DNA from: Mizuhopecten yessoensis
Lineage: Eukaryota
Length of the DNA: 64,000 bases
Assembly: GCF_002113885.1 (NCBI RefSeq)
Contig: NW_018408770.1
Coordinates: forward strand, 714,458 to 778,457
Direction: 5' to 3'
Numbering within the stretch: position 1 is the stretch's first letter; each line of letters opens with the position of its first letter. Shown here piece by piece: positions 1-57,222 of this stretch. The notes under the pieces were generated by a model, which was not told where the DNA came from, searched no databases, and was given only the letters and a program-made list of their open reading frames with translations. Both the position numbers and the translations under genes were made by a program.

Positions 1-1300
1 GTGACTTGTTCTGTAGGTAATCCTCCATGACCTTGTGATACAACACAGTGACTTGTTCTGTATGTAATCCTCCATGACCTTGTGATACAACACAGTGGCT
101 TGTTCTATAGGTAATCCGCCATGACCTTGTGATACGACACAGTGTCTTGTTCTCTAGGTAATCCTCATGACCTTGTGATACAACACAGTGACTTGTTCTC
201 TAGGTAATCCTCCATGACCTTGTGATACAACACGGTGACTTGTTCTGTAGGTAATCCTCCATGACCTTGTGATACAACACAGTGACTTGTTCTGTAGTTT
301 ATCCTCCATGACCTTGTGAAACAACATGGTGACTTGTTCTCTAGGTAATCCTCCATGACTTTGTGATAGGACACAGTGTCTTGTTCTCTAGGTAATCCTC
401 ATGACCTTGTGATACAACCCAGTGACTTGTTCTCTAGGTAGTCCTCCATGCCCTTGTGATACCCCACGGTGCCTTGTTCTCTAGGTAATCCTCTATGACC
501 TTGTGATACAACACGGTCACTTGTTCTCTAGGTAATCCTCATGACCTTGTGATACAACGCGGTGACTTGTTCTCTAGGTAGTCCTCCATGACCTTGTGAT
601 ACAGCACAGTGACTTGTTCTCTAGGGAATCCTCCATGACCTTGTGATTCAACACGGTGACTTTTTCTCTAGGTAATCCTCCATGGCCTTGTTATACAACA
701 CGGTGACTTGTTCCCTAGGTAATCCTCCATGACCTGGTGATACAACACGGTGACTTGTTCCCTAGGTAATCCTCCATGACCTAGTGATACAACACGGTGA
801 CTTGTGCTCTAGGTAATCCTCATGACCTTGTGATACCACACAGTGACTTATTTTGTAGGTAATCCTCCATGACCTGGTGATACAACACGGTGACTTGTTC
901 CCTAGGTAATCCTCCATGACCTTTTGATACAACACAGTGACTTGTTGTGTAGGTAATCCTCCATGACCTGGTGATACAACACGGTGACTTGTGCTCTAGG
1001 TAATCCTCATGACCTTGTGATACAACCCGGTGTCTTTTTCTCTAGGTAATCCTTCATGACCTTGTGATACAACACCGGGACTTGTTCTCTAGGTAAACCT
1101 CCATGACCTTGTGATACAGCACAGTGACTTGTTCTCTAGGGAATCCTCATCACCTTGTGATACCACACAGTGACTTGTTCTCTAGCTAATCCTCATGACC
1201 TTGTGATACCACACGGTGACTTGTTCTGTAGGTAATCCTCCATGACCTTGTGATACGACACAGTGTCTTATTCTGTAGGTAATCCTCCATGACCTTGTGA
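1..1300 (+). repeat. 47-bp (some 45-bp) minisatellite, at least 27 copies, built from the 3' splice site plus the first 22 nt of the PLAT exon at 1279
   Basis: Unit GTAATCCTCCATGACCTTGTGATACAACACAGTGACTTGTTCTCTAG. The last copy runs directly into the coding exon. The array continues upstream of the window. Confidence 0.95.
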
Positions 1301-4300
1301 AGGACGAGAAGTTACAGTTTGATGTAGACAGATGGCTGTCCTACGATGATAAGGGTGGTGATATAGTCGTGGAAGTCCCGGTCAAACACCCTAAACACGA
1401 TGCATGGCCAGGTAAGGCAACTTCATTTTCCTAGGAATGACTCAATATGTAATCTTTGCTTTGTGATGATGGGGCAAGCATTATGTTACATGTATCAGCA
1501 TTATCAATAGTTAAGTCTCTAAGACAAGTGTTTGGCTTGGCAGTGTTTGACTTTTTATATCCAAATCTATCTATATTAACAGCATGAAGTCAATATTACT
1601 GCTAGAATGAATATGTTTGATTGTTAATCACACACTCAAGTGTTTATGTAGTGTAATAAAACAATCACTTTTTTTGTGTAATTGTAATATTGCCCATTGT
1701 TATGTCATAAGGAACAATGATGAATCTAATTATGGTGGCATTTTTTTCTCTTTTTCTGGTCAAACTTTTGACAACACGTGCTAGTTTAGATTAAGTTGTA
1801 GTGCCAGTGATGATAACAATCTCTAGCTTCCACTCCTTTTGATGATGACGATACTCCATGAAGATTACTTTGTAAAAAAATCTTTGACATCAGACCTTGT
1901 TCAACAATGAAGAATGAAATAGTCCTTCAGTCAGTTTTAGTGTGGCTTTTCTCATCAAGTATTAATTTTTCTTTCTTGTTTTCTTGTGATTTTTGACTTC
2001 ATAGCGCCAGGTAAGATTGCTTGTGTTTAGTTGTGGCTTCCTTAAATATTTAATAATGGCTTTGTAATAGTAATATATATATATGTGCATGGTGGTGAAA
2101 CAACCTTCACTTGACTCAGACATCTTAATAAGCTTCTGACTTGTATTTGTACTGTAAACCAAAAAAAAAAAAAAAAAAAAACTAGAGCAGGATTTGTGTG
2201 GTACAAATGTGTACGTATTTATATTGGGGCATATCCATGTCTTAAGTCTTTCGAAACATAAGTAGAATGTAGCAAAGAGGAAAAGGTGCATATAAACTCC
2301 TTTATAACATAGAAAATTTACACCTTTAGGCCACAACAGATCATTTCTACTTAAAAAAGTATTTTTTGTAAACCCTGCCAGACTAAATTTTAGCAACAAG
2401 GTATCAGGGACTGATAGTCCACCAGTAACTACAAGGTAACGGCCAACTTCAGGGACTGATAGTCCACCAGTAACTACAAGGTAACGGCCAACTTCAGGGA
2501 CTGACAGTCCACCAGTAGCTACAAGGTAATGGCCAACTTCAGGGACTGACAGTCCACCAGTAACTACAAGGTAACAGCCAACTTCAGGGACTGATAGTCC
2601 ACAAGTAACAACAAGGTAACGGCCAACTTCAGGGACCGATAGTCCACCAGTAACTACAAGGTAACGGCCAACTTCAGGGACTGATAGTCCACCAGTAACT
2701 ATACAAGATAACGGCCAACTTCAGGGACTGATAGTCCACCAGTAACAACAAGGTAACGGCCAACTTCAGGGACCGATAGTCCTCCAGTAACTATACAAGA
2801 TAACGGCCAACTTCAGGGACTGATAGTCCACCAGTAGCTACAAGGTAACGGCCAACTTAAGGGACTGATAGTCCACCAGTAGCTACAAGGTAACAGCCAA
2901 CTTCAGGGACTGATAGTCCACCAGTAACAACAAGGTAACGGCCAACTTCAGGGACCGATAGTCCACCAGTAACTATACAAGATAACGGCCAACTTCAGGG
3001 ACTGATAGTCCACCAGTATCTACAAGGTAACGGCCAACTTCAGGGACTGATAGTCCCCCAGTAACTACAATGTAAAGGCCAATTTCAGGTACTGATAATC
3101 CACCAGTATCTACAAGGTAACGGCCAACTTCAGGGACTGACAGTCCACCAGTAGCTACAATGTAACGGCCAACTTCAGGGACTGATAGTCCACCAGTATC
3201 TACAAGGTAACGGCCAACTTCAGGGACTGATAGTCCACCAGTAACTACAATGTAAAGGCCAATTTCAGGGACTGATAATCCACCAGTATCTACAAGGTAA
3301 CGGCCAACTTCAGGGACTGATAGTCCACCAGTAGCTACAAGGCAACGGCCAACTTCAGGGACTGATTGTCTACCAGTAACTATACAAGGAAACGGCCAAC
3401 TTCAGGGACTGATAGTCCACCAGTAGCTACAAGGTAACGGCCAACTTCAGGGACTGATTGTCTACCAGTAACTATACAAGGTAACGGCCAACTTCAGGGA
3501 CTGATAGTCCACCAGTAGCTACAAGGTAACGGCCAACTTAAGGGACTGATAGTCCACCAGTAGCTACAAGGTAAAGGCCAACTTCAGGGACTGATAGTCC
3601 CTACAAGGTAACGGCCAACTTCAGGGACTGATAGTCCACCAGTAGCTACAAGGTAAAGGCAAACTTCAGGGACTGATAGTCCCTACAAGGTAACGGCCAA
3701 CTTCAGGGACTGATAGTCCCCCAGTAGCTACAATGTAACGGCCAACTTCAGGGACTGATAGTCCACCAGTAACTATACAAGGTAACGGCCAACTTCAGGG
3801 ACAGATAGTCCACCAGTAACTACAAGGTAAAGGCCAACTTCAGGGACTGATAGTCCACCAGTAGCTACAAGGTAACGACCAACTTCAGGGACTGATAGTC
3901 CCTACAAGGTAACGGCCAACTTCAGGGACAGATAGTCCACCAGTAGCTACAAGGTAAAGGCCAACTTCAGGGACTGATAGTCAACCAGTAGCTACAAGGT
4001 AACGGCCGACTTCAGGGACTGATAGTCCACCAGTAGCTACAATGTAACGGCCAACTTCAGGGACTGATAGTCCACCAGTAACTACAATATAACGGCCAAC
4101 TTCAGGGACTGATAGTCCACCAGCAAAGTCAACCACCTTGTTACAATGCAGTTGATAATTTATACTTACAATGCATAGCTAGAATCAGATTATTACAACT
4201 GATGCTAAATAGAGAAAAACTGTAGATATTATAATATTGATCGTAGAAATACACTTCGTAACCTATAGGATATTGGAGATTCATAGTATTTTGTTTTAAA

Positions 4301-7300
4301 GTGCACCTATTATAAAACATTGCATAAATCTTCTGTAAAACCATCTTATTTTAGAAATACAATTATTATATTTAAGCTAGCAGAGCTGCACTCAACAAAA
4401 AGTAAGAAAGACATAGGAAATTTGGCGAATTCTTTATTAAAATACATGTTTATTTTCATGGGAAAAAGGAAAAACACTTTTCCGTTTAGAGAATGTGTAG
4501 ATGTAATGTCTACACTTGTGTTGTGTCAAGTGAAATAGATGTTGTGGAAATGTAATTTGTAAATTTGTACTGTTGTGTATTTGTTTATACGTACTTGAAC
4601 CAGTGAGACATATGGCTCAAGGAATAATAAATAACTTAAAGTTGAAAAAACGGTTTATAACATCTTTCTGAATGAGTTAGGAGTCTCATTATAGTACTAC
4701 GAGAAAATTTTTGGTGGATCATTAGTTGCCACTTCGTCCGTCCTTCCGTCCGTCCTTTTCGTGTCCGGAGCATAACTTTACCCACATTTCAGCTAGGATC
4801 ATGAAACTTGGTGTGTACATCACTCATACAAAGACGATGTGCACTGGCCCAAATTAGGGGCCCACAGCCCCTTATTTACATAGTTGTTGCCCTTTGCTTA
4901 AATGTTGTGTCCGGGGCATAAATTTGCCTGCATTTAAGATAGGATCATGAAACTTTCACTTGTATGTACTTTAGTCATACTAAGGTGATGTGCACTGTGC
5001 ACAATTTAGGGCTCACAACCCCTTATTTACAGACGTATTGCCCTTTGTTGCCCTTTACTAAAATGTCGTGCCTGGAGCATAGCTTTGCCTGCATCAATTA
5101 AGGTTGGATCATGAAACTTGGTGTGTACATCAGTCATACTAAGGTGATGTGCACTGTACCAAATTAAGGGTCCACTACCCCATATTTACAGAGTTGTTGC
5201 CCTATGTTAAAACATTGTGTCGGGAGCATAACTTTTCCCGCAATTAAGATAGGATCATGAAACTTTCACTTGGTTTGTACATCAGTCATACTCAAGCAAT
5301 GTGCAGGGTACCAAATTCAGCACAGAGGTATTGCCCTTTTATAAAATATTGTGTCCTGAGCATAAGTCTTGAGTCCCTTTCGAAACAAAATTGAAATGCA
5401 CAGTGTAAAAAATTTAAAATTACCATTGAATTAATATTGGTACGTGTATATCATTGTAACACATATACAATACATGTAACAGTTAACAATTGTTTTTTCA
5501 TCAACAATGATATTTTCTTCTGATAATACATACAGAAACATAATACAAAATATTGTAATCTAATGACAGAAAAGGACAGTGACCGCATCTTTGTACAGAA
5601 CGGAAATTAGATCATTTTGTTTACTATTTTTAGCTACACTGTAATAGTAATCACTCTTTCTAAAAAATGTATGCTGGAGATCCATAATTTTATATTTGCT
5701 ACTCACTTCCTGTCTTCAGGTACCTGTAATATGAAACTACTGGAAATGGCACCAAATAGATTTTTTTGTATGATGCTTTTTTGATTTCGCACTTCCAATA
5801 TTTAATCTACTTTCTTTACCCGTGACCCTAACATCACAAATTTGACTCGTGTCCATAACTGGTGAATTCTGAACTCCTAACATTACATTAGTTGTTTTTT
5901 GGAGATAAATTGGGGAAAGTTATGTTACACTTTGACCTACTTCTAGACAGATTTTTGGATGAATCCATATGTTAAATATTTTACATAAATTTCTGTACAG
6001 TATATGAAGATCCATTTTACAGATTGAAATACCGGTATATATTTATTGAAAATAAGGAAATACAGTGGGTATTAATAAAGATTCTTTTAAGATATACAGC
6101 GGTATATCACAACATCGGGTAAATAAGTGCTGTATTATTGTACACTTCTGACTGACTTTGTGTTCTCTGCAGTGAACAAGTACGTTGTACAGACGACGAC
6201 CGGGAATGAGGCTGGGTCAGGGTCAGATGCTAATGTTTACATCAACCTGTTCGGCACACTGGGTGACTCCGGCAAACGTTACCTCAAAAACAACAGGGAA
6301 GGTGGGAACACCTTCGAGACAGGAAAGGTAAGGTGAAAGGCAAAGTAGGTTATAGTGATAACCTAACCTACTTAACCTACAAAATGATAGTCCATGGAGG
6401 TCATAGGTCAGGGAGGTCACCAAGACAGAGGTCTTTGAAAAAATGAGGTGTTGTCTGTTTAGCATTCATAGTATTTCATAACTTCACACTTTAATATCAA
6501 ATCATCCTGTAATTAAGTATTTTTTATAAAATAACTATTTTGATAATGATGCAACCTTGTGAATCATGGTCTCTTAAAGATGAAACCCCTTTTGGTTGTG
6601 GTCTGATAAAGATGCAACCTCTTGAGGTCAAGGTCTGATAGAGACGCACCCTTTTGAGGTCATGGTCTGATAAAAATGCAACCTCTTCAGATCATGGTCT
6701 GATAAAAATGCAACCTCTTCAGATCATGGTCTGATAAAAACGCACCCCTTTGAGGTCATTGTCTGATAAAAACGCACCCTTTTAAGGTCATGGTCTGATG
6801 AAGATGCACCCTTTTGAGGTCATGGTCTTATAAAGATGCAACCTATTCAGAATGGTCTGATAAAGATGCAACCTCTTGAGGTCATGATCTGATCAAAGTC
6901 ACAAAATGAAAGTTGAAATGGTCACTATCGAGATTCGAGCTCTTCCTGGCCACTCCAAATTGTTCATGATCTATGAAGATTGTATGCTAGTCCTCATTAT
7001 TACTTGTAGGTGGACACCTTTGTAGTGGAGGCTGTAGAACTTGGTCGCCTAGAGACCATCGTCATTGGTCATGATTCCTCAGGATCTGATCCTGCCTGGT
7101 TGGTGGAGAGGGTCACAGTTATGGAGTCTGACGATGCAGAAAAACGTTACTTGTTTCCATGTGGCAGGTAAGTTCTGAGTCCTATAGAATACATATAGAA
7201 GATAAATCAATCTTCGTTATTTATTAATTATTAGGCTCAACATTGTAGTGTATATATTCTATCAAACACAGACTTTAGGAAGTCATTGGCATAAGAAACA

Positions 7301-16541: not shown

Positions 16542-16589
<48 letters not shown>

Positions 16590-19500: not shown

Positions 19501-22500
19501 TCAACGAAAAATGTATGAAAATATCTAACAAATTAAAATTGTAAAAGTTTAAAAAATAGCACAGTCTGAATTGTTTATGCAATGAATTCAATTTCAGTTA
19601 AAAATATATGCTAGGAAATGCTGCTGAAATTAAAAACACAAAAAAAAAAAAAAAAAATCAGGATATTTGGCAAGGATGTGTTTAATAGGTTATCATAAGT
19701 ATATATTTAATTATGTAAATATGAGTAAAGAACTGCAATGAAACCATAACTATAATGAGATTATCAGCAAATATCAAATTATAAGTATCTTGACAAAACA
19801 ATACTTAGCTTAGAGCAAAACCTCACTTACAACTCAATTACATATTTATGTCCAACAAAAAGTAAAGTTTTCAAATTTTGCAGTTAAAATACAGTAAAAC
19901 CTTGTTATACTGCCACCATTTTCATGAGAAAAGTTGGCATTATAAGGGGGTTTGGCGACAAATTGAGGGAAAATGTATGAAGGCATTCTTATGAGAAAGA
20001 GAACAAATCATGGCAGTAAAGGAGGTCGCAAATTAAAAGGGGCATTATATCGAGGTTTTAATGTAGATAAACATTCATAGTGATAAATAGCTATTTGATG
20101 AACTGACAGGTCTGGTGAGTGTGGAGGAGTATTGAACAATGTTTAACAGTTGATGTACTGACAGGTCTGGTGAGTGTGGATCCGAAGGAGTATAGAACAA
20201 TGTTTAACAGTTGATGTACTGACAGGTCTGGTGAGTGTGGAGGAGTACAGAACAATGTTTAACAGTTGATGTACTGACAGGTCTGGTGAGTGTGGAGGAG
20301 TACAGAACAATGTTTAACAGTTGATGTACTGACAGGTCTGGTGAGTGTGGAGGAGTACAGAACAATGTTTAACAGTTGATGTACTGACAGGTCTGGTGAG
20401 TGTGGAGGAGTACAGAACAATGTTTAACAGTTGATGTACTGACAGGTCTGGTGAGTGTGGAGGAGTACAGAACAATGTTTAACAGTTGATGTACTGACAG
20501 GTCTGGTGAGTGTGGAGGAGTACAGAACAATGTTTAACAGTTGATGTACTGACAGGTCTGGTGAGTGTGGAGGAGTACAGAACAATGTTTAACAGTTGAT
20601 GTACTGACAGGTCTGGTGAGTGTGGAGGAGTACAGAACAATGTTTAACAGTTGATGTACTGACAGGTCTGGTGAGTGTGGAGGAGTACAGAACAATGTTT
20701 AACAGTTGATGTACTGACAGGTCTGGTGAGTGTGGAGGAGTACAGAACAATGTTTAACAGTTGATGTACTGACAGGTCTGGTGAGTGTGGAGGAGTACAG
20801 AACAATGTTTAACAGTTGATGTACTGACAGGTCTGGTGAGTGTGGAGGAGTACAGAACAATGTTTAACAGTTGATGTACTGACAGGTCTGGTGAGTGTGG
20901 AGGAGTACAGAACAATGTTTAACAGTTGATGTACTGACAGGTCTGGTGAGTGTGGAGGAGTACAGAACAATGTTTAACAGTTGATGTACTGACAGGTCTG
21001 GTGAGTGTGGAGGAGTACAGAACAATGTTTAACAGTTGATGTACTGACAGGTCTGGTGAGTGTGGAGGAGTACAGAACAATGTTTAACAGTTGATGTACT
21101 GACAGGTCTGGTGAGTGTGGAGGAGTACAGAACAATGTTTAACAGTTGATGTACTGACAGGTCTGGTGAGTGTGGAGGAGTACAGAACAATGTTTAACAG
21201 TTGATGTACTGACAGGTCTGGTGAGTGTGGAGGAGTACAGAACAATGTTTAACAGTTGATGTACTGACAGGTCTGGTGAGTGTGGAGGAGTACAGAACAA
21301 TGTTTAACAGTTGATGTACTGACAGGTCTGGTGAGTGTGGAGGAGTACAGAACAATGTTTAACAGTTGATGTACTGACAGGTCTGGTGAGTGTGGAGGAG
21401 TACAGAACAATGTTTAACAGTTGATGTACTGACAGGTCTGGTGAGTGTGGAGGAGTACAGAACAATGTTTAACAGTTGATGTACTGACAGGTCTGGTGAG
21501 TGTGGAGGAGTACAGAACAATGTTTAACAGTTGATGTACTGACAGGTCTGGTGAGTGTGGAGGAGTACAGAACAATGTTTAACAGTTGATGTACTGACAG
21601 GTCTGGTGAGTGTGGAGGAGTACAGAACAATGTTTAACAGTTGATGTACTGACAGGTCTGGTGAGTGTGGAGGAGTACAGAACAATGTTTAACAGTTGAT
21701 GTACTGACAGGTCTGGTGAGTGTGGAGGAGTACAGAACAATGTTTAACAGTTGATGTACTGACAGGTCTGGTGAGTGTGGAGGAGTACAGAACAATGTTT
21801 AACAGTTGATGTACTGACAGGTCTGGTGAGTGTGGAGGAGTATAGAACAATGTTTAACAGTTGATGTACTGACAGGTCTGGTGAGTGTGGAGGAGTACAG
21901 AACAATGTTTAACAGTTGATGTACTGACAGGTCTGGTGAGTGTGGAGGAGTATAGAACAATGTTTAACAGTTGATGTACTAACATGTCTGGTGAGTGTGA
22001 AGGAGTATAGAACAATGTTTAACAGTTGATGTACTGACAGGTCTGGAGAGTGTGGAGGAGTATAGAACAATGTTTAACAGTTGAGGTACTAACATGTCTG
22101 ACTAGATGTACTGACAGGTCTGGTGAGACTGTACACTATAATCTGAATGTTTAACAGTTGAGGTACTAACATGTCTGACTACAAATGGAGGTCGTCCGAC
22201 ACAGCTGGCACTGGATGGGCGCTTGCTTGTTCCTACTTGCTCTAGCTTCTTCCTGTACACTGGAGACGGAGACCTAGAACGAAAAACAGAGGCAACTGTT
22301 GGCTTGTGGTAGTTTTTCTGGTCCTCCTCAGCATCAACATCCACGTATGTCCTACAGGGAGGTAAAAAGAACAGCCCAGTCAGTTAGTTGAATGATGTAT
22401 ACAGGAAAGGAAAGCTGTATATCACCTCACAGAAGAAATACAGAAAAGAAAATGAAAGTGTATTTACATGCAGAAAATAATTACTATTTCTATTATCAGG

Positions 22501-25500
22501 TAAGTAGAGGTTGTAAAGGTATATATTAGCTGATAAGAATCATCAACCACGAGCAACTGTAACCCACCACCCACGGCAAATCTAAAAGTTGTTAGCGTAA
22601 ATGCAGGAGTAGCTAATATTTACAGTTTGAAGATCTTTGACAGATATTGCATTTGTTTTTTCAAACAAAATGTCTGTATTCTCCAATCAATGAAAATGAA
22701 TATAAATCCTTACAAGAAAATGATGAGAGAGTTTGCTACTTACCACTCAATGGTTAAGAAAGAGGTGCATATAGTCAGATATTAAGGAGGGTATGTATAC
22801 AATGTTATGTGAGGGAGAAGAGTGGATATTAACAAAAAATAAGGGAAAGGGAAGGTTGNATGATAGGAAATCCAAATTTCTTGTTCTTTCCCACGGTTTT
22901 ACATGGGAGAATTAGTAAGTTTTGTTATCATATATATATATTGAAAGCCAAATAGGTGTTCACGCTAGCACTCGACACAAATGGAACATCATGTGACAAG
23001 ACTTGGTCGATGAACATCACATATGACATGTTTTGTTATGACCAGGATCACGTGACAACATTACACTCGTCTTTTTTATGGTTGTTGGACGTCACATGAC
23101 AAGACTAGTAGGGCTGCAGCAAGCTCATCAAACAAGGAAAATATGTACAAAAACAAAGCAAAATATGCAAAAATCATGAAGAAAAGCAAAAGCTAAATAG
23201 CTTAGCTATACGAAAATATTGATAAATGGTGATAGAAAAGATAATTTGTGAAAATTAAGAATGTATTACACTGACTGAGCTGTTGATCTTTTTAACATTA
23301 TGTAACATAACTGTAATTCTTAAAAGGAATAAAGTATTTTATCACATTATACAAGTAATTTCATAAAATTTAATCAATAGCTTATCATATCATTGTAATT
23401 AGCCATTAAACATAATATCATGATCTTTTCACTGAACAAACAAGCAATCTGCTTCAATTCAATAAATTCATGTAGGTTTATTAATTCAATACTTTTCAAA
23501 ATATTATATACAATGCAATATTTATATACATGGAACTATTACAGAAAAACAACGTGAATGGATTGTTATTGTGGCCACACTCTCAGTACATGTAATATGA
23601 TTCAAAACAAACTGGTGCACAAGGAGATTCTTTATCACTCAGGTAATGAATCTTTTCCATAATTTGTTGATTTAGAACTGATACATATAACCATTATCAA
23701 CCAATAAATGAGCAATACAACTTTTAAAAAATCCTGTTTTAACCCAGATTAAGCCACATCTTTGATCAATATAAAGAAACTCCTTCTATATCAAAGTTAG
23801 CATACAAAGATACAAAGTTAAACCTGACAAGCAGAAAACTCAAGTATGGATGACAAACCTCATGGAGCTTCTTGATGATGGTCGTGATGTTGAGCGAGAT
23901 CGCCTTCTAGATTTCTGTGCAAAATAAATGATTATGAATGCAAATAAAAAATCTGAGATAAATAAATAAAAAAGTGTACGTCTAATCAGCAGATACCGGT
24001 AGTATTTATTTCATTAAAAAAATGTATAGGAGGTATGGATCTGTTGAACAGTTAATACACTTTACACTGTACATTTATCAATGCAATTTACAGAAAGTAC
24101 AGGTATATATCAATAATTTACATAGATCAAAGTAATGTCTCATCTAAACCTAGATCTAGGGGATAGAACTTAACTAGATAGAAGTATCTTACCCTCTCAT
24201 CTCTCAGAGCGTCCTCCAGAGCATCTAACTCAGGGGAAAGAGATTCACTGATGTTGGTAACAGTGAAAAACTCCAGCTTGGGTGCAATGCCCTGTGTAAC
24301 AAACAAAATAGAAATAAGTATACTAAATAGTACTCACTTTATTTAAGCTATGTTAATTGTTCGGTTATAACATTTGAAGGCTGTTTAATGACCTGTTATG
24401 AAGGTTAAGCTTAAATGAAGTTAATACTGTATTTCAAATACTACAAGTCACAATCCATACTGAGGATAGAGAACTAATAAATATATAGGTCATAAGTGTA
24501 TAGAATGTCAAAGACACATCAACTGAATTATAACTGAAACATTAAAAAAAAAAATTGATGTCATTTTAAATAATAAACGTTCATGAATAAAATTCTATTT
24601 ACAATGAGATAAAATTTTAAAAGGCCAGGGAAATCATGCGACCCTTTGTAAGAGTTTTTGCCAGTAATATAGGGAAGTTTCTACTCACAGGGAAGTCCAT
24701 AGTGCGAGCCAGAAGGAGTTCTCTTGTGTTGGAGGCATAGGCAGGAGCTAACGATGGGTATGGAAATAGGAAGTCACGAGCATTTGAAGAATAGGAAGCC
24801 AGACGAATAGCACCGTCACAGTCATCGCGCAATTGTAATAGTTCTACTATTACCAGCTCATCTGTAAGAAAAATGGTCTTAAAGTTTGAAATAACATTTA
24901 TTTTGTTTTTAGTATTGTAATTGTGTGTGTGATACAACAAAAAGGTTCAACAGACCAGTTTTTCGAAATGTATAACTTAGATATGACGGAGGTTCACATT
25001 AATTTGCTGAAGTCTTCCGTACTGTGGTCTATAAACTGACAAAGAAAACCAAGGACACCATTTGTTTCCTTAACAGTAACACCACGATGTGATTTTCTAA
25101 TGAGATGTTTTAACAATACATAACATTGTATCACAATCAAATATATGATAGTACGAGAAAAGGAGAAAGGATAGAAATGGAAAAGACAGAAGCATATAAA
25201 AGAAGGAAAAAATATATAGAAATTTATGTTTTTATTTGCAAAATAGTGGCATCTTAAGATAAATCAACCAACCAGTAATACTTGTTACACTCTAACTAAG
25301 TGTAACACTCTAACTAAGTATAACACTCTAACTAAGTGTAACACTCTAACTAAGTATAACACTCTAACTAAGTGTAACACTCTAACTAAGTGTAACACTC
25401 TAACTAAGTGTAACACTCTAACTAAGTGTAACACTCTAACTAAGTGTAACACTCTAACTAAGTGTAACACTCTAACTAAGTGTAACACTCTAACTAAGTG

Positions 25501-27403: not shown

Positions 27404-30400
27404 ATGTCTGAGTACGATTCGGTATCTAGAAGTTCTCTGAACCTAAAAGGCGTATCGGATAAGAAAATTAATAAGTGAGGTTTAGTTATTTATTAATTTT
27501 ATGACTTAGTATTTAGGCGGACCGTTGTGCGACTCCAGGCATAGGGGACAGCAGTAAACAATCTGTAATCATTCCCTTCACAGATGTTTTATTTTGATAG
27601 AACAATACCAAATGAAATTTATCAATTTTTTTAGAGTGTCTAGATTTATATGTTTTATGTGTGACTTGGATTTGGTTGTTAACCATATTCATGATAACAG
27701 GCAATTTGCATACACACTCACTGACCAGAGGTAACCCATTTAACAATGTAGACCATAATGGACTAATCCAGATCAATGTATGGTAAAGTCTACTTAAGTT
27801 ACCTAGGGTTGAAAGGGTTAACATTAACAGTATTGTATATATCAGTGTGTCAAATCTGGGTTGTTTCGTCCTAAATCCTGTTTGCACTACATGTCGCTTC
27901 GCCCTAAATCCAGTTTGCCCAATAATGTTTCGCCCTCTATTGTAAATAAACATTTTCGAGTTATGACTTGGATATCATTCAAAATGTAACTTTAAAACCC
28001 TTACGTAACAATATAGTGTTGACAGAATCTATTTCAGATGGATTTTACGTGCAGATGATCTGATATGGTCGACCTCCTAGCTGCAATAATGTAGCAATGA
28101 CGACACATTTTTTTTATATGTTAGTACTATGGTCGACCATGTACGAATCATAAGAGTGTAATGACAAAAATGACTAAGAAAAATTTAGGAAAATTCAAAG
28201 GAGGCTGCAATTTTAGCCATACACAACTAAACTGGCTTGAAAAGTTTAACCATATAACTATTTAAGGGCGAAACAACCTAGTGCATAATGACACGGGGCA
28301 AACAGGATTGTGTGTCCAGCACCTGTGTTTAATTTGCATACTGTAATATATCAAACCACATCAACAGTAGTGTTATGTGACTAGTTCCTGAGACAGAAAT
28401 TACCAATAAATAGTAGAGTTATGAGTACACAACTAAAAAGTTGTTTACATGTCCAAAATAACATAGTCAGATATACCAGCTGACCATACATATTAAACAG
28501 TGACATGCCAAAGGTCTTTCCTGTAACATCATTTCATCATTGGATTCTGTGTTAATTAATTTTCTTTCAAAATGGTTTTTGTCACTTTGTTGGACATGTG
28601 CACCCAATTAGTATTATATGATGCCTGTCCATTAGATTTCGTAGACCATACTGTAAATTTTGTGATTTTCCTTTGGTATACCAATACATAATGGAAATGT
28701 ATTGGAGAAAAAACATGATTAAAAATTATATTTCAATTACCAGGTAATTTAAATAGATTTTATTTTACATGCGATACATGTAGTTTTGTTCACAGTAATA
28801 TTTTGCTATCAATAATTTCTAGGAAAAAGAAAAAGAAGGACAAAGAAAGGGAAGCTATGAAAATGTATGAACAGGTCTCTAACACAAAGTCTTCAGAGGA
28901 AGATGGAAAGAAGACAAAGCCGGTAGATAAACGGACAAAAGCAGAAAAAGCATTTGATGGAGCAAGAGAAAAAAGGGTAAATTTGCCTACCTTTATATTT
29001 TTATTTACAGTTTTAGATAACTGAAGTTTACTTATCACAAACAGATATGGTGTCCCAAATCTCTGCGGTTAAAATGGATGTTTCCATTGGGATCAGTCAA
29101 ACAGCTCAGCATTACCTGACTGCTTTACTGAAGACTTGACCAAATGTGTAAAATCCTAAATATTGTCATAAATGAGTCGTCTGCATGCAAAGCACCCTGT
29201 AAAAGATGAAGGAGAGCAGCCTGTGAATTATGATGTATGTCATCAATCCCTTTGTTTTACAATTTTGTAAGTTTATTTTGGTATAGTTATTTCTGTTCAT
29301 TGTTTACTACCTTCCTTTGCCTTTCATAATATAACCTACTAACAAAATTATGTTGGTGAATTTTATGATATATATTAATTTTAAAAAATGGTAAAATAAT
29401 TTTCATTCTTATTTTAGGAAGCAGAGCTCATCATAGATAAAGCCAGTAAAACTCACAAGGAACGTATCATGGTAAGTTTGACACACACAGGTGTGTATAG
29501 TTGTGTATCTAAACATTCAACCAGCACTTTCTTGAATTCTAACAACACCACTATATAACACAATATACCTTTTTTTCACTCACAGTATTCAAGTAAAGTA
29601 TATTGTTGTTAAAAAATCTAAGTTTTGAACACAAAAAATTCCAGCAATGTCAGAAATTGGTTTAACAACATTTTAGAAAAATAAATGGCGATGATAATAT
29701 CAAGTGATGACCTCATTACTGAAAATTTATAAAGGCAATGTCTGTTGTTCAAACAATTAATCTTTTATCAATAAAATTTGCTGAAAGACACACAGAAAAA
29801 TTAATCAACAAAACCATATATGATGGATGGAATGAGCAATACTTTCTGAATGAGGTAATTACACTATTATGTAACACTTCACATTATCTAATAATATAAA
29901 ACATGACAAACATGCATATCATCTGTTAAAATAACATTTTTAGGTCACCTGAGCTTTAGCTCAAGTGACCTATTGCTATCCGTTTTCGTCCGTCGTCGTC
30001 CGTCGTCCGTTAACATTTTACATTTCAAACTTAAAGTCAAGTTCTGCTGGGCCGATTGAACTGAAAGTTGGTAGGAATGATCGTCTCATGGTCCTGACAA
30101 AGTGTTGTTATTTTTCGGGTCGATCAGAAATCCAATATGGCCGCCACAGCCACCATTTTGAAAACCTATTTCAAACTTAAAGTCAAGTTCTGCTGGACCG
30201 ATTGAACTGAAAGTTGGTAGGAATGATCGCCTCATGGTCCTGACAAAGTGTTGTTATTTTTTGGGTCGATCAGAAATCCAATATGGCCACCACGGCCGCC
30301 ATTTTGAAAACCTATTTCAAACTTAAAGTCAAGTTCTGCTGGACCGATTGAACTTAAAGTTTGTAGGAATGATCGACTCATGGTCCTGACAAAGTGTTGT

Positions 30401-31097
30401 TATTTTTCAGGTCAATCATAAATCCAATATGGCCGCCACGGCCACCATTTTGAAAACATATTTCAAACTTAAAGTCAAGTTCTGCTAGGCCGATTGAACT
30501 GAAACTTTGTAGGAATGATTGACTCATGGTCCTGACAAAGTGTTGTTATTTTTCGGGTCGATCAGAAATCCAATATGGCCACCACGGCTGCCATTTTGGT
30601 AAACTATTTCAAACTTAAAGTAAAGATCTACTTGGCCGATTGAACTGAAACTTTGTAGGAATGATCGAATCATGGTCCTGACAAAGTGTTGTTATTTTTC
30701 GGGTCAATCAGAAATACAATTTGGCTGCCATGGCTGCTATTTTGCTACTAAGTTCTAATAGGCCGATCTCACTTAAAATTGGTCTAGGAATGATCAGCTC
30801 ATGGTCCTGACAAAGTTAAGTTAACATTATACTATTTTTTACTCAAATTGGTACATATTTCAACAACAAAAATAAATACTATAGACTCAGGTGACCGTTA
30901 AGGCCCATGAGCCTCTTGTTTTTTATAGTGCTATGAATATTTCTGTGTTTCTATTAGTGCTAAATCTTATGTGTAGTCTAGATATGATGTAGACGGCAAT
31001 CATTAAACTGTTCTTGTCTGTTTTCCAGTTATTCAACAGTCATTTGGATGCAATGACGGAACATTTTGATATTCCTAAAGTGAGTTGGACCAAGTGA
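27404..31097 (+). CDS. FAM32A: Protein FAM32A (spliceosome exon-ligation factor), 4 exons, 115 aa
   Basis: Exons 27404-27474, 28823-28976, 29418-29471 and 31029-31097(TGA). Translation MSEYDSVSRSSLNLKGV...KKKKKKDK...DKRTKAEKAF...KASKTHKERIM LFNSHLDAMTEHFDIPKVSWTK*, which has the diagnostic FAM32A C-terminus. Confidence 0.95.
27731..27821 (-). mobile_element. 91-bp TTAA-flanked miniature element (piggyBac-like ends), copy 1
   Basis: GTAA|CCC...GGG|TTAA. It is the reverse complement of 50516-50606; both copies give the spurious peptide SRLYHTxIWxSPLWST in the ORF track. Confidence 0.7.
27846..28323. mobile_element. Degenerate MITE-like element with inverted subterminal repeats
   Basis: Left GGTTGTTTCGTCCT...AATCCTGTTTGC versus right AGGGCGAAACAACC...GCAAACAGGATT. 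Confidence 0.45.
29937..30920 (+). mobile_element. Helentron-associated non-autonomous element (HINE-like) with ~5.5 x 146-bp internal repeats, in FAM32A intron 3
   Basis: 5' hairpin TAGGTCACCTGAGC-TTTA-GCTCAAGTGACCTA and a (CGTC)n tract. Units start at 30023, 30169, 30315, 30461 and 30607. The 3' end has the sub-TIR CTCAGGTGACC and the hairpin AGGCCCATGAGCCT followed by CTTGTT. Both flanks are T-runs. Confidence 0.85.
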
Positions 31098-32817
31098 CCT
31101 GTGTTTGGACCCAAAATCATTGTGACATGTACAGTTGTGGACCAGCATACACCTGAGACTGTATACCAATGGAACTGCATACATATGGATTCTGTACCAA
31201 TAATGTTTACATTATCATGTTGTGCTAGTGAAATTAAGACATATTATCACCTGGCTGTTGAAATTGTGTATAGGTCACATGCAGACCATGCTGTCATGAG
31301 GCTTGTAGGTGACAGAAAAACTATGGCAGATGATGAATAGGCAAACCATATGACAGGTGACATCTTACCAGTGACAAAGTGAAAAAATGTTTTCCATAAA
31401 TATTTTGAAATGTCATTTTTCTGATGAAACTTGTGAATTGACAGTAAAACTTACAGGATGATTTTTCACAAGATGAATTGACTTTTATATATAATTTTAG
31501 TAAAACAGAAAATGTCAAAGTGTTTTATTTCAATAAATGTGTTCTTTCCTAAACTTGGATTATCTAAGAAATACAAAAGATTTGATTATTGGGCTTCTCT
31601 CCATACTACATGTTTATTCATGGAAGGTAGTTATATTTTAAACAGTTCTCTTAAAGTTCTGTTCAATGTATCAATACATGTACATGGAAATATCAAAATT
31701 ATGAAATAAATGTTTTAATATGAGAGTAAATTTTGTACATTGTGCTATTTTCTTTGCTAGATATGGATCTTGAAAATGATGGCATCTTGCACTGTTTATC
31801 AATCTGAAGCTTTCTTATGTTTGTACTTCTGTTTGTTAACGTGAGAAAGTTAATGTATTAAAAATTATTGAAATGTAATTAATTAGAAAATAGCCTGTTA
31901 CAGTGCAGCCTGATGGTATATGTTACCAATCCTGATACAATGTGATGGCTTACACTACGTGTTGATTCATAGGGTGATGCTATAATTTACGTTATCAACC
32001 AAGGAAACCCTTTAGATATGTTAGAAAGCATACTTAGACATTTTTAAAATGCAGAATTTGTCAGTGATGTGTTACCTCAAACATTCTAATACAACTGATG
32101 ATTGCAATACACGTAACCTATTTGTGTGAACAGGAGGCAAATGAGTCAATTACAGAGAATCGTTGTGAAGTACCTTCAATAAATTATATTATCTATTTCA
32201 CTGGATCGCAAGCAGCTGTTTATATACAACAATGTATATTAGAGCTGGCCCCACCAAAATAGTGTTTCTTTTTACCACAATAGAAAAAAATCAGAGCTGG
32301 CCCCACCAAAATAGTGTTTCTATTTACCACAATTGATTTGTATGTCCGTTCGTCCATGCAACAACTGGTTAGACTCCTGCATTTAGTTCTATTACTCAAA
32401 TAAAAGTCCAGCTGTCATCCACTTAAAATGTAGAAACATCTTTAGAGGCTAAGGAAGACAATTTATATAACAAATTTGTAAACAGATAAAAGGATGCATT
32501 CACTTTCACTGTCGGAGCAATAAAGAGCAAATGTAGTTTTATAGCACTTCATTACACATCATTTGATATCTTTTTTTCCGCAAGAATGCATCAGAAGTAT
32601 GACATTTTGCTCCTGATTTGAAAAAGACATTCTCTGAAATTGAATTTGAAAGTGCTATTGTTAAAAGGTTTATATTTTACAAATACAGCAATCTTTTTAG
32701 TGACTGGTTACCTGTATTTCCATTTCAACAATAACACCTTTTGGACATACATTTTATATATTATGCTCTACTATGCAGTGATCTTATCAACTGAATAATG
32801 GAATTTTCAAGTTCTAG

Positions 32818-33722
32818 ATATGTCACCTGGCCTGAAGTTTATGCCAATGGTGCAGTGTCTGTCATCTGTCTTTCAACTCTTTTAAGTCACTGCTAGTTCT
32901 GATTGAATCAGTGTATTTTGTCTTTGATCAGGCCAAGGGCATGATGCTAAACAATAAAGTATTAATTTGGGGCATAGAGATGGGATCAAAAAGTAGAATT
33001 ATAATTCTTGCATTCTTAAATGACCTTAGCTGTTAATAGGATTTGTTAAACTAAATAAAACCAAACCAAAATTCTATCTTTGGGGCAGAGGAGTAGTGTT
33101 TAATAGGGGATACATCTTCAAACCTACTCTTTCAGTACCATTAAATGGCCTGGAGTAGCCTATAGGCCCAAGGGAGTTCAACCTATGAGTGGGGAGCATG
33201 CCCAGCTGGGAACAGTTGAGATCCTCAGTGTGTAGTGTGTAATCATATAACTGCGTGCTTGGCATGAAGATGCTACAAGCCTTAGCTCCATAGGGGGCCT
33301 GGTCATAGCCCTGGCAATATAATCATATGCACATATAATATATTGATGATAAACTGAAAGTATTTAACGTTGACCTTTGGGACCATGGAATTCATTGCTG
33401 CATATATATCAACAAAGATCACTAAATGGGGGTCCTCTAGATCATATTTTAGCCAAATTTGCTACAAAGAAACCTTGGAATCTGGGATTCAATTGTTTCA
33501 TAGCTGTTCCCCCTGGATGCTGAGAGGCCTGCATGACCCAAAATATGGAATTATAAGCAATATTACTTTTGATAGTGATGTTTTGCAATGATTGAATACA
33601 TATCCAGTGAGTGATACATGCCCTCTAGGCCTCTTGCTTTTTATTAAAGACATATTTATGTATTCACTTGTTACAAAAAGTATTTTACATTTTTTCATAC
33701 AGGCCCTCTGGGCCTCTTGCTT
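32818..33722 (+). mobile_element. Decayed HINE-like element with a duplicated 3' hairpin
   Basis: The 5' end TCACCTGGCC...ATGGTGCAGTGTCTGTCATCTGTC resembles the head of the 52993-54728 element. The 3' hairpin GCCCTCTRGGCCTCTTG occurs at ~33620 and ~33703. Confidence 0.5.
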
Positions 33723-34019
33723 GTAAAAAAATAATTTTCTGCATCAACATACTCCAAAAGTATGTGATATGTTTTCAAATGGGTCTTTTACAACTTCACT
33801 CTTTTTGCTTTGATGTCAATTTTCCGTTCATTTCTACTTTAAAATATCGACAAAAAAAGCAAGTAATGATAATATAAAAATGGTGGTGTGCTACCTTTTA
33901 ACCTTTCGGTATCTTCTATCTGAATTCTAAAAGTACGAGGTGTTCCGATGGTGTACAACGTGCTTGTGGATGCGAAATAAACACCATCGATATCTGTCAG
34001 CTGTTCTCCGAGAATCAGT

Positions 34020-37000
34020 ATGCCTAAAAAGTAAGTATGAAGCACAGTAATAATGTAAAGACACGTTTAAATGGTTTTGTCAACAATATCAGGGGTGGTT
34101 TGCTTATGAAATGTTGTAGGAGCATATTCTTCGTTGTCCAGCCGCCGGAGTGTCCGCTTGTTTTCATCTTTTCATTGGGGACACTAGGGTCTACTGAAGC
34201 GGGCCGACTTAACTCATGACTTAAACTGTCTTACCCTTTCATTTTCCGTACCGTGACTTTGGATTGGTGGGTCGTTGATAACGAAAGCATACCCGGTGCT
34301 CATTTGTCCCAATTCTCAGTGAAATACCTCAATCTATCAAAACGATAACCAGAGTGCAAGACCGGTTACTGGTGGATCAGCATTCAGTATAAGTTTAAGT
34401 GCACCATTTCCCTCATTAGCGGGTGGGATCTAAGGTGGATGCTAGAAGTAGGTAATCAATGACTTTATGAAATTAAAGCCTGGTTAACTCAATCTATATA
34501 TCAATGCCCAGTTCCACTTACGTGGCTTAGTATGTTAGTTTGTGTGGTCCATGTGATTTTTTCTTCCTGTTTAATATTGGATTAAAACATAATTTCAGAG
34601 GTAAAGGGAGGGTGCAGGTGGTAGAACCTGTGTATGGATCTGATGACGAGCGCCGCTATGAAAAGGATCCTGAGCCAGACCAAGATGATGATGACTACTT
34701 CTACGATGATGTTGACAAATTCCATATGCAAAAAGAAAAGGTAAAAAGGGATAAGTTAATTAACATGTTATGATAACACATTACCTGGTTGTTTCTTTAC
34801 ATCTGATTCATATGCAGTGAAGCATTTTACCTCATTATTGAGGATAGACCAAGTCACCATGTGATAGAGTCTGCTGTAATTTAAAATTGACAGTCTGAAT
34901 GACAAAATATGAGGAATTGCTTGTCAAATTTGATAGGTAAACGTCTAGATTGGATTATTTTTGTGTGGGTTTGATTGAGTGACAAGTGCTAGTATAGACC
35001 ACAATGTATTTTAATACTTAGGTAATTATACCAGTAATTTATTGATAGGTTTTGAAGTTTTACTTGAAACATTGTCTTTTAAAAAAACTAGCCATTTTTC
35101 ATCATCATTTGACATATTCCAACCCCATACCCACTAACTGGTGTTAAAATGTGTGCTGTTGATTTTCAGATGTTACTGGACCAAGGAGTGCAGGATGATG
35201 AAAACATGGACTCGGAGAGCGAGGTATTAAAAATAGATAACTTTTGACAGAGGACTGTCCTACTTGTTCTCATCTTCATGATCAGTTGCCCTGGTGATCA
35301 ACGGATAACATATCCATTTGTGCCATACAATAAATATAATACTGGGCATGCTGTCTAAACCGAACACCCCTGTGGCCACAAATAATTTGGCCAATTTGCG
35401 GAGAGTTCAAGATTGTAGAGAACCTACATGGTATACATTATCATTGTCTGAAATTTATTGGGCTAGTTTAATAAAAAAAAAAATCTGGCTTAGTTTAGAG
35501 AGAGAGTGTACTGTAGTCTACATTTAGACAATCCATTACATGGTAGATATGCAGCAGTCATTGACATTTCACAGTCAAAAATGTTTATTATAGTCCTTGC
35601 ATCTTTTTTGCAGTGGTATTGTAGTGAACTGTATGAATCTAATATTGTATGGAGGAGTTACACATGGTGTTGTAAGCAATAAATACACATTTTCTTGTTC
35701 CAATGTAATAGAACGAGGGTCTGTGGCATGTTAATTTAAAGAACAGTTACATATACTCCCTTGTGCCTATATAACCTAGCAAAGATATTTAATGTTATCA
35801 TTTGTGGAAGAGTTACAAGCTTCTAAGTCCTTGTGCTATAGGATGATTTTCCTTGGTGTTATAATTTACGGAATTACGGCAGAGTTCAATGTCCTTGTGC
35901 AATGGGCTACGGTTTTGTGATGTAGTGATTTTGGGAACAGTTAGATGTCTAGGTCCCTGTGTTTTGGGATTAAGTTCCGCAGATTAAAAGTTAGGGAATA
36001 ATTACTGATTTCTAAGTCCCTGTGTTATAGGGTGAGGTTCTCGGTGTTGGTGGTGACAGCGATGATGACCTCTTGAGTGATGATGACCTCAAAGCCTACA
36101 AGAAACAGTTGCGGAGGATAAAACTGAACCGTAAGAAGAGTGACATGGGCAGTGACCTGGAAGACCAGGATGAGGAAGGTAACTACAGGTCCATCAGTTT
36201 GTGGTGTGGATCATCATATACATGATACAGTATCTATTCCAGGTGACATTCCAGCTGAAACAGTTTAAGAATTGGCTTCAAGGAGATAGCAAGTTTTTAG
36301 TTCAGGTATATTTTCTAAGATGAAGTGGAGGAAAATAGGCGTGGTCAAGCAATAGTCCAACCCCAATTTCCATAAAACTTATCAAAAACTCTCTTTATAT
36401 ATTTTGAATAATGCATGCCTTGTCTTGTGTACGTAGCAATAAGAAGGCGTCGGGTCATGAGAACCTCACTTCTCACCAGATTTGCTCTGCCATTTCTTTG
36501 AAGGTGTTACAGAAACTGCTGAGGGAATTAGTTTTGTTTTCAGACCGACACAAGGCTTATAGAGGACCGGTTAAGTCGGGGCAAAAATGAGAATATAGCC
36601 AATTTAGGTTACTTTGAAAATAGAGTAGATACAGTTGAGGTGTAATATCTAATAGTAATCAGTGTGTGCCAATGGTATTAATAGATCTTCGATATACTTT
36701 ATTTTGTTGGAAAATATTTTTTAAGGTTCATTATTCAATCATTTAAACACTTGTTTTGTTACTTACAGGGGAGCCTGATCACACGACGTACGGCAAGAAG
36801 GTGCAAGACTATTACAACGCAGATTTCAGTGACGACAATGTTGGTAAGTAACCACTTTCTGTATCTATTGTTAACATAGATGAGGATGAACATACAGATG
36901 ACCAGGTCTCATTTAATTCAAGAATCATTAGCTCAATGCCATGTTAATGGTGTATCTAAATCACTGATATTGTGATTTATCTTTTTAATTCAGTAACCAA

Positions 37001-40000
37001 AATAACTTTATAACCTATTTTGTAGACCTCTCTGGGTCCGAGGATGAGGAAGGAGCGGCCGCCTTGGAGGAAAAAGAGGCATTAGCTCTACAGAAACGTA
37101 TCAACGCTGAACTGGATGATCAGGACTTTGGACTTGATATGTTCAAGGTATGTAGGGTGATAATAGTGTGACATGGTTGTACACTGTACTATAAACAGGT
37201 CCTTCACTGGCCCATCAATGGTGTACACTCTCATCATAAGTATGACCTTATCTTGTGCGAAGACCTCAACCTAACTAACACACCCATGTAGACATGCAGA
37301 AAGACAACTGAGTTTTGAATTATTTTGAAATAAGAATGTAATACTGAAATTAAAATGGGTGCTCTGGACACCCTTATTATAAGCATGACATTAATTTCTG
37401 GAATAACAGACTTATATGTACATTATATAAACGCATACAGATAATTGGTTATAAATTGTTTAGAATTCATAATTTAATACTGAAGTATAAGGGTGCTACA
37501 TGTTAAATAGGAGCCTTAAATTCAATGCGTCTGTTATGTATATTCAAAGACAGAAAGTGGAGTTTGTATTTCTTGCTGTTACAGGAAAAGAAGCTTGTGG
37601 AAGCTGAAAATGAGGAGGAAAAGATCACACAAGACTTGACAAAGCTGTCCAGGAAGGAGAAATTACAGGTATGTAATTTACTATACATTAAAGGTACATT
37701 AGAACTATTGAAGTATACAGGAAGATGGTTATATTTCTGTGTATGAACATTTTCTTCATCAAGCTGATCAGTAAACACTACATCAAATATTTGTTTTACA
37801 GCTTTTGAAGAAGGAGTCGCCAGAAATGCTGACTTTGATTGATGACTATAAATCCAAGGTATGTACTTCCTGTGAAAACACTCAGTGACGAGATCTCCTA
37901 ATTAGATATCCAAATTGTTTTCACCTTTAATCTTGAAAGATGTGTTTGATTATTTTTTGGCAAGATTTTGCTGTTGAATATATATATGCAAGTGTTATTG
38001 GTATATTTCCAGTATCATAGACATTCTCTAAACTTTACATGCAGTATCACCTGCGATACAGATTTCAATAAAGTGGACATTTTTGTAAAGCGTTAAAGAA
38101 AGAAATATATGTCAATGAAAATGTATTGTTTATCTGGACTTGATGACCCTGATGTTTTATTCAGGAACAGTAGTGTCACGATTTACAAGGTTTGACAGTT
38201 GTATGTGTATGTAACCTTCAGTAGATGGCAGAGATGAGAGACATGTTCATGTCACTGTTGACACTTCAGTAATCTGTGCATGCTACCCTTATATATATAT
38301 ATAGCAGGAGTGAGTGATGTCCTTATTCCACTGTTGAGACTGTATAAAGTTTTTTTACTCTTGGGTAGATGACTGAGGTGAGGGACATCTTTATGTCACT
38401 GTTGAGACTGTACACTATAATCTGTGTATGTTACTCCTGGGTAGATGACTGAGGCGAGGGACATCTTTATGTCACTGTTGAGACTGTACACTATAATCTG
38501 TGTATGTTACTCCTGGGTAGATGACTGAGGTGAGGGACATCTTTATGTCGCTGTTGAGACTATACTATAATCTGTGTATGTTACTCCTGTGTAGATGACG
38601 GAGGTGAGGGACATCTTTATGTCGCTGTTGAGACTATACTATAATCTGTGTATGTTACTCCTGTGTAGATGACTGAGGGGAGGGACATCTTTATGTCACT
38701 GTTGAGACTATACTATAATCTGTGTATGTTACTCCTGTGTAGATGACTGAGGCGAGGGACATCTTTATGTCACTGTTGAGACTGTACACTATAATCTGTG
38801 TATGTTACTCCTGGGTAGATGACTGAGGTGAGGGACATATTTATGTCACTGTTGAGACTGTATACTATAATCTGTGTATGTTACTCCTGGGTAGATGACT
38901 GAGGTGAGGGACATCTTTATGTCACAGTTGAGACTGTATACTGTAATCTGTGTATGTTACTCCTGTGTAGATGACCGAGGTGAGGGACATCTTTATGTCA
39001 CTGTTGAGACTGTATAATGTAATCTGTGTATGTTACTCCTGTGTAGATGACTGAGGCGAGGGACATCTTTATGTCACTGTTGAGACTGTACACTATAATC
39101 TGTGTATGTTACTCCTGGGTAGATGACTGAGGTGAGGGACATCTTTATGTCGCTGTTGAGACTATACTATAATCTGTGTATGTTACTCCTGTGTAGATGG
39201 CTGAGGTGAGGGACATCTTTATGTCACTGTTGAGACTATATACTATAATCTGTGTATGTTACTCCTGTGTAGATGTCTGAGGTGAGGGACATCTTTATGT
39301 CACTGTTCAGACTGTATACTATAATCTGTGTATGTTACTCCTGGGTAGATGACTGAGGTGAGGGACATGTTTATGTCACTGTTGAGACTCTATACTGAAA
39401 TCTGTGTATGTTACTCCTGTGTAGATGACTGAGGTGAGGGACATCTTTATGCCACTGTTGAGACTGGTGAGAGAGGGAAAGATCCAGGGAAAAGCTGGAG
39501 ACTATGTGGAGACTAAAACCAAACTTCACCTAAAGTAAGCTTTATTAATATTTAGAAATATATAAAACAATTTGTCGTAATCTATTCTTCTTTAAAATTT
39601 CATTTTTGTGTATATATCCATATATAAGGGACAAAGCAATTTGTAACTGATTGGTTGTTCTATGTACATATAATTATAGGCTGAATTAGTCTATAAAATA
39701 TACAATCAATGTAAGTAAAATATTCAGATCTTAAAGAAATTACTCTGGACACAAAAAGGTATTCAGCCTTTCTTATTATTATATAGCTATATAAAAGTAA
39801 TGATAGAATACATTCAGCGTATTGTGTTTGAAGGTGATTAACAGCCATACTGTGTGTACACAAATTCATTGATTTCACAAGTACAATACTTGTCACAACA
39901 GTGTGATAGTTTCATAAATATTGTTAAATTAGTACATTTGTGCCTACTTCCAGTGAGCAGTAACAGAGGTTTGAGTCTGAAAAGGAATAGTTCTAATCTG

Positions 40001-52008: not shown

Positions 52009-57222
<5,214 letters not shown>

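What the first reader, a model, noticed from the sequence alone, without database searches (positions are those of the whole stretch)
1..39466. Recurrent splice-junction minisatellites: intronic arrays made of tandem copies of the exon-intron boundary in three unrelated genes
Seen in sequence: of about nine sizeable intronic tandem arrays in the window, four have a unit that straddles a real splice site, with the terminal copy being the functional junction. These are the PLAT-gene acceptor (1-1300, 47 bp), the SPATA6 donor (20096-22185, 55 bp), and two UTP3 acceptors (35745-36050, ~63 bp, decayed; 38200-39466, 76 bp). The units are otherwise unrelated, so these are independent births, ranging from near-perfect to almost erased. 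Each array extends only into the intron, leaving the CDS intact while stacking decoy splice sites. In the three intact arrays, the decoys I translated give a frameshift or premature stop. Inference: this genome has an ongoing process that seeds or tolerates tandem amplification at splice junctions (e.g. co-transcriptional R-loop or repair slippage), plus a way to pick the terminal site. Copy number could tune productive splicing versus NMD. I do not know of this being described as a genome-wide system.
Basis: partly seen in the sequence, partly recalled or inferred. Interest (0 to 1): 0.9.

Follow-up and report, generated by a model that had tools for sequence, protein, structure and literature searches.

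The report
Splice-junction minisatellites ("mirages") in scallop genes
Four intron repeats in this Yesso scallop locus really are tandem copies of the genes' own exon-intron boundaries, a kind already named "mirages" in amphioxus; their number is about what frequent random local duplication predicts, and the one tested spare splice site was not used in RNA.

Summary
Real, but a known kind. The window is Mizuhopecten yessoensis. All four arrays straddle true junctions: an RP1-like DCX-PLAT acceptor (1279), the SPATA6 donor (22171, 84 RNA reads) and UTP3 acceptors 36031 and 39425 (RefSeq model; same positions in three other scallops). Such repeats are published as amphioxus "mirages" and human F7 IVS7; this scan noted them on other windows. 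Enrichment was tested on 49 scallop arrays collapsed to one unit: 9 straddle a junction against 5.7 expected (1.6x, CI 0.7-3.0), 6 against 4.8 outside the discovery genes, 8.7 expected after GC weighting. A targeted process is therefore not needed; up to about 2-3x is not excluded. No read used the nearest SPATA6 decoy, and most SPATA6 "decoys" are degenerate. The decayed UTP3 array predates the split from Pecten, and junction arrays occur in amphioxus, abalone and mussel UTP3, so this is not genome-specific. One oddity remains: a 22-nt patch of the UTP3 unit sits in the SPATA6 array 16.3 kb away and nowhere else in the genome search; a template switch is likely but unverified by independent DNA.

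The parts
1..1300 (+). 47-bp array; unit = last ~25 nt of intron + first 22 nt of a PLAT exon of an RP1-like (DCX + many PLAT) gene; each unit holds AG|GTAATC. The array continues upstream of the window across an N stretch
1279..1411 (+). PLAT exon whose acceptor is the terminal copy
   Evidence: frame and homology to the gene's other PLAT exons; no RNA test
20095..22181 (-). SPATA6 donor array, 55-bp unit with 7 nt of exon-like sequence (11-12 nt in the 77-bp terminal variant); only two exact decoy donors, 77 and 187 nt downstream
22171..22273 (-). SPATA6 exon ending at the real donor 22171 (minor longer form starts at about 22351)
   Evidence: RNA reads; donor conserved in four scallops
22124..22145 (+). 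22-nt patch identical to the exon/intron seam of the UTP3 76-bp unit, replacing 18 nt of the standard 55-bp unit
   Evidence: not covered by the independent DNA run
35745..36050 (+). decayed ~63-bp array on UTP3 acceptor 36031; penultimate copy shared with Pecten; one strong decoy AG left (35842)
38200..39466 (+). 76-bp array on UTP3 acceptor 39425 (about 34 nt intron + 42 nt exon): two decayed head copies and 14 decoys with intact AG
39395..39400 (+). branch-point-like motif at -27, present only before the real acceptor
   Evidence: motif scan; use not tested
39425..39534 (+). UTP3 exon using the terminal acceptor
   Evidence: RefSeq protein P0168 and three orthologues

Best explanation
These are 'mirage' minisatellites, by-products of a high rate of local tandem duplication. 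Shown: tandem arrays fill about 20% of this 264-kb region; the junction units are locus-specific copies of the adjacent exon edge; the exon-proximal site is used; their number matches random placement of seeds once arrays are collapsed to one unit. Inferred: a 30-90-bp segment is duplicated by slippage or microhomology-mediated repair anywhere in a gene, then expands and homogenises by further slippage, unequal exchange and conversion. Seeds inside exons are purged. Seeds across a junction always leave one intact junction next to the exon and survive if ordinary splice-site choice (first-donor scanning, exon definition, branch point) picks it. Inner copies decay or lose signals, as in SPATA6 and in the UTP3 branch-point motif. 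The decoys have no function.
For: 104 TRF arrays cover 20% of 264 kb. Collapsed-array null: 6 of 37 against 4.8 outside the discovery genes; 2 of 19 against 2.3 in the unseen 69 upstream exons of the RP1-like gene; 9 of 49 against 5.7 for all scallops, against 8.7 with GC weighting (non-junction arrays are 39% GC, introns 33%); an uncollapsed null gives 3.3 and a false 2.7x excess. Unit motifs are locus-specific. 0 of 84 reads at the nearest SPATA6 decoy. Same kind of array in Branchiostoma, Haliotis, Mytilus. Different junctions carry arrays in different scallops. Published mirages do not disturb splicing (PMC3087553, PMC3902484); first-donor scanning silences identical decoys in F7 (PMC1557585).
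Against: Small sample: CI of the ratio reaches 2.7-3.0. Pooled with outgroups 13 of 57 against 6.7 (p 0.02 unweighted, 0.20 GC-weighted). The null assumes no selection against straddlers, so parity could hide some mutational excess. Arrays ending 1-45 nt inside the intron are in excess (11 against 5.4, p 0.016, post hoc). The acceptor at 39425 carries a different array in Ylistrum too (49 bp x 69).
Confidence: 0.65

Rival explanations
1. Exon edges are mild mutational hotspots (about 2x) for tandem duplication or expansion, for chromatin, replication or recombination reasons that do not depend on the splice site itself; still non-functional.
For: Pooled ratio 1.9 (CI 1.0-3.3); outgroups 4 of 8 against 1.0; excess of near-miss arrays within 45 nt of junctions; the same acceptor hit in Mizuhopecten and Ylistrum; repeated expansions at the UTP3 intron-2 acceptor in three genera.
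Against: Independent test set shows ratio 0.9-1.2; GC weighting or a same-intron null removes most of the excess; Pinctada adds none.
Confidence: 0.25
2. A splicing- or transcription-coupled process (R-loop, RNA-templated repair) specifically amplifies splice junctions.
For: 33 of 49 arrays are G-skewed on the sense strand; two arrays end within 2-3 nt of an acceptor.
Against: No significant excess; SPATA6 array is strongly C-rich on the sense strand and the PLAT array slightly so; units copy unspliced genomic boundaries, never spliced exon-exon joints; exon parts range from 2 to 88 nt with no fixed register.
Confidence: 0.05
3. The arrays are regulatory: copy number tunes productive splicing against NMD.
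For: Decoys in PLAT and UTP3 keep AG and score like the real site (18 of 27 and 7 of 14); all lead to frameshift or stop.
Against: Frameshift or stop is the default for any retained intron piece; 0 of 84 reads at the SPATA6 decoy; arrays are not conserved at orthologous junctions; SPATA6 decoys have decayed.
Confidence: 0.03
4. The arrays are assembly artefacts.
For: The PLAT array is broken by an N stretch; copy numbers in this fragmented assembly (82,659 contigs) are unreliable; the SPATA6 array is nearly perfect.
Against: Copies differ by many substitutions and indels; four RNA reads of another animal run through consecutive 55-bp units; like arrays occur in eight other assemblies, and one duplicate is shared with Pecten.
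Confidence: 0.02

Closest known systems
Amphioxus 'mirages' (Adh3, globins BflGb6/BflGb9, troponin C, PGBD5; PMC3087553, PMC3902484)
   Same: Minisatellite-like tandem copies of donor or acceptor boundaries, 10-160-bp units, many with AG/GT, normal splicing, boundary copy excluded from homogenisation; recurrent in unrelated genes.
   Different: Here in a bivalve; some arrays are longer (at least 37 copies); tested here against a null; length instability between haplotypes not tested.
Human F7 IVS7 37-bp VNTR (PMC1557585)
   Same: First unit spans the exon-intron boundary and is followed by identical donor pseudo-sites that stay silent.
   Different: Single gene; donor only. In SPATA6 most copies have a degenerate donor; three of the four arrays here are acceptors, for which that scanning result does not apply directly.
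Intron gain by tandem duplication of an AGGT segment (Rogers model; PMC4974935)
   Same: The PLAT unit contains AG|GT.
   Different: The intron's donor lies 288 nt before the array; the unit is part intronic; UTP3 and SPATA6 intron positions are conserved in other scallops. No intron was created.
Dual-specificity splice-site array of UBC (PMC10809524)
   Same: Tandem AGGT sites that could act as acceptor or donor (PLAT array; regenerated donor scores 8.1).
   Different: UBC sites delimit coding repeats and are used; here they are intronic and use is untested.

Membership tests
mirage minisatellite | tandem unit spans an exon-intron boundary of the host gene | tested here: met
mirage minisatellite | many units keep AG or GT signals | tested here: met
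   26 of 27 PLAT and 14 of 14 UTP3 decoys keep AG; SPATA6 units keep GT but in a weak context
mirage minisatellite | normal splicing at the authentic site | tested here: met
   SPATA6: 84 reads at 22171, none at the decoy 77 nt downstream; UTP3 from the RefSeq model only; PLAT not tested with RNA
mirage minisatellite | copy-number instability between haplotypes or cells | not testable with these tools
   the reads tool does not take long repeats; the DNA run did not cover the array
intron gain by tandem duplication | array boundaries form the donor and acceptor of a new intron absent in relatives | tested here: not met
   donor 288 nt outside the PLAT array; UTP3 and SPATA6 introns conserved in four scallops
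dual-specificity / recursive splice-site array | AG|GT motif in each unit with plausible scores as both sites | tested here: met
   acceptor 3.8-8.1, donor 5.7 native and 8.1 regenerated
dual-specificity / recursive splice-site array | sites are used in splicing intermediates | not testable with these tools
   needs nascent RNA or lariat reads across the array
dispersed or transposon-borne satellite | unit occurs at other loci | tested here: not met
   PLAT and SPATA6 motifs only at this locus; contrast the 2404-4123 unit, found on three other contigs

The most novel reading that the evidence does not exclude
Exon edges in scallops and other marine invertebrates are real hotspots (2x or more) of tandem duplication, and expanding arrays can switch template to an unrelated array tens of kilobases away in cis, as the 22-nt UTP3-derived patch in the SPATA6 array suggests. 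That would tie minisatellite birth to gene architecture and give a footprint of the repair pathway.
Probability: 0.2. Interest if true: 0.6.

Novelty: new member of a known kind. Interest (0 to 1): 0.3.

Why it matters
It extends 'mirages' to bivalves and shows, with a proper null, that their apparent clustering at junctions is largely an effect of array length, small introns and GC. Practically, such arrays trap gene predictors and break assemblies. The acceptor arrays, with 14-35 near-identical decoys, are ready natural substrates for asking how a 3' splice site is chosen among identical competitors. The shared patch, if confirmed, is a rare trace of sequence exchange between unrelated minisatellites.

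Tried and rejected
Intron gain was rejected (donor outside the array). Dispersed-satellite origin was rejected for two junction units. Overall homology of the SPATA6 and UTP3 units was rejected (p about 0.1 without the patch). The patch was not found in orthologous loci of three scallops. An uncollapsed null was rejected because array growth dilutes junction density. The original mirage paper (PMC117041) and Zhuo et al. 2007 (PMC1783408) were not held, so they are cited only through PMC3087553. No paper on scallop junction minisatellites was found. The intact arrays were not sent to the reads tool because it turns away long repeats. N stretches were not filled.

Full report
Source. The window is G000:C5443:714458-778457. 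A UTP3 search returned the Mizuhopecten yessoensis RefSeq protein P0168 on a contig of the same length, 1,342,288 b, and it matches the window exactly in 15 exons. The genes are an RP1-like gene (DCX plus many PLAT domains), SPATA6 (minus), FAM32A, UTP3/SAS10 and a Src-family kinase (minus).

Observation. The three intact arrays are found by TRF at the stated places; the decayed one is significant by alignment and periodicity. UTP3 acceptors 36031 and 39425 are used by the RefSeq model and conserved in Pecten, Argopecten and Ylistrum. RNA reads from two studies put the SPATA6 donor at 22171 (61 and 23 reads, loose ends matching the next exon). The PLAT acceptor at 1279 is supported by frame and by homology to the gene's other PLAT exons, not by RNA. 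The 47-bp array resumes upstream of a 5.4-kb N stretch and begins 288 nt after the intron's donor; the N stretch was left unfilled. All decoys give a frameshift or a stop, which is the default for retained intron sequence.

In SPATA6 only two decoys equal the real donor; the others score -2.3 against 4.9 on a matrix trained on 68 scallop introns. The decayed UTP3 array is not a birth of this genome: its penultimate copy shares a 17-nt exact stretch, with derived changes, with Pecten, and Argopecten carries 34-bp and 63-bp arrays built on the same acceptor region. The units are unrelated overall, but a 22-nt patch is shared (below).

Is there an excess at junctions? These maps other than UTP3 and FAM32A are my own and may miss a few exons. 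Each array was collapsed to one unit and placed at random in the collapsed gene, excluding wholly exonic placements. For arrays of at least 3 copies and period up to 125: discovery genes 3 of 12 against 0.9 (p 0.07; Src followed 22 kb past the window; the decayed array is below TRF detection and not counted); RP1 upstream 2 of 19 against 2.3; other scallops 4 of 18 against 2.5; all scallops 9 of 49 against 5.7 (ratio 1.6, CI 0.7-3.0). Arrays away from junctions are GC-richer than introns (0.39 against 0.33); weighting the null for this raises the expectation to 8.7. Without collapsing, the expectation is 3.3, which gives a false 2.7x excess. UTP3 of amphioxus, oyster, mussel and abalone gave 4 of 8 against 1.0 and Pinctada none; pooled, 13 of 57 against 6.7 (p 0.02; 0.20 with GC weighting). 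Arrays that end 1-45 nt inside the intron were in excess in the test set (11 against 5.4, p 0.016, post hoc). So a directed process is not needed, and a weak exon-edge effect is not excluded.

How the real site is chosen. For SPATA6 no read was spliced at the intact decoy 77 nt downstream (0 of 84; upper bound about 3.5%, before NMD; the animals' alleles are unknown). This agrees with first-donor scanning in F7 (PMC1557585). For UTP3 a branch-point-like motif at -27 is present only before the real acceptor. In several other arrays decoys score as well as the real site, so exon definition or enhancers in the unique exon part are inferred. Each PLAT unit reads AG|GT, so a wrong acceptor would regenerate a donor (score 8.1) and might be re-spliced; this is untested.

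The shared patch. The donor-proximal SPATA6 unit holds 22 nt (22124-22145) identical to the exon/intron seam of the UTP3 unit, in the same orientation, 16.3 kb away. A genome pattern search found it only at these two places (a lower bound). Among 61 arrays in 264 kb it is the only such match between unrelated, distant arrays; chance matches stop at 16-17 nt. It replaces 18 nt by 18 nt, flanked by short matches on both sides. Part of it is conserved UTP3 coding sequence, so UTP3 to SPATA6 is the likelier direction (inference). A microhomology-mediated template switch in cis is the best reading; a gap-filling artefact is not excluded, since the independent DNA run did not cover 22040-22859 and a closed gap (one N) lies at 22859.

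What is known. Tandem copies of exon-intron boundaries are described in amphioxus Adh3, globin, troponin C and PGBD5 genes as 'mirages', with normal splicing and unclear origin (PMC3087553, PMC3902484), and in human F7. The arrays here meet the testable defining features. They are not intron gains. I found no genome-wide treatment in the library searched. Earlier notes of this scan report the same pattern on other pieces of this genome; my count agrees with the note that found random duplication sufficient and gives weaker enrichment than the note that found 2-4x.

Verdict. Observation confirmed; interpretation partly supported; new member of a known kind; interest 0.3. Spliced models were searched exon by exon by reference; the joined step was left out of all search tools (exons were joined only inside local scripts to check frame).

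Noticed in passing
window 22124-22145 and 38403-39102: 22-nt patch shared by the SPATA6 and UTP3 arrays, found nowhere else in the genome search.
   Followed up: partly
window 22273 and 22351: SPATA6 exon has two in-frame acceptors 78 nt apart; RNA reads favour the short form about 62 to 11.
   Followed up: partly
window 39425-39440 and each 76-bp unit: Each UTP3 unit has a donor-like site 9 nt after its acceptor (score 5.0), a possible in-frame three-codon microexon.
   Followed up: no
L002-L008 (upstream to 66.5 kb before the window): The 'PLAT gene' is an RP1-like gene with DCX domains and about 20 PLAT repeats in over 70 exons; it has two more donor arrays (42 and 39-40 bp) and one 31-bp acceptor array.
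   Followed up: yes
L010, about 87.4-89.7 kb upstream: 38-bp x 65 array ending 2 nt inside an eIF3i-like exon; another 55-bp array nearby may start at a gene end.
   Followed up: partly
   Followed up: yes
window 53186-54608, 30022-30734, 4884-5317: 146-159-bp arrays; the 53-kb one has dispersed relatives in the flanks and looks transposon-borne.
   Followed up: partly
window 2404-4123: 45-bp array whose unit also occurs on three other contigs, so seeded from a dispersed repeat.
   Followed up: partly
L024 16971-20278; L022 18198-18723; L023 21820-22763; L025 3823-4205; L028 6933-7766 and 11186-11551: Junction arrays in Ylistrum, Pecten, Argopecten and Branchiostoma orthologues; the Ylistrum one sits on the same UTP3 acceptor as the 76-bp array but has a different unit.
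   Followed up: yes
window 43904-44248: Short element with a direct repeat of about 60 nt at both ends; ARAGORN finds no tRNA in the window.
   Followed up: no
window 16543-16588: Run of 46 C in the last SPATA6 intron; Pecten has a C run in a different SPATA6 intron.
   Followed up: no
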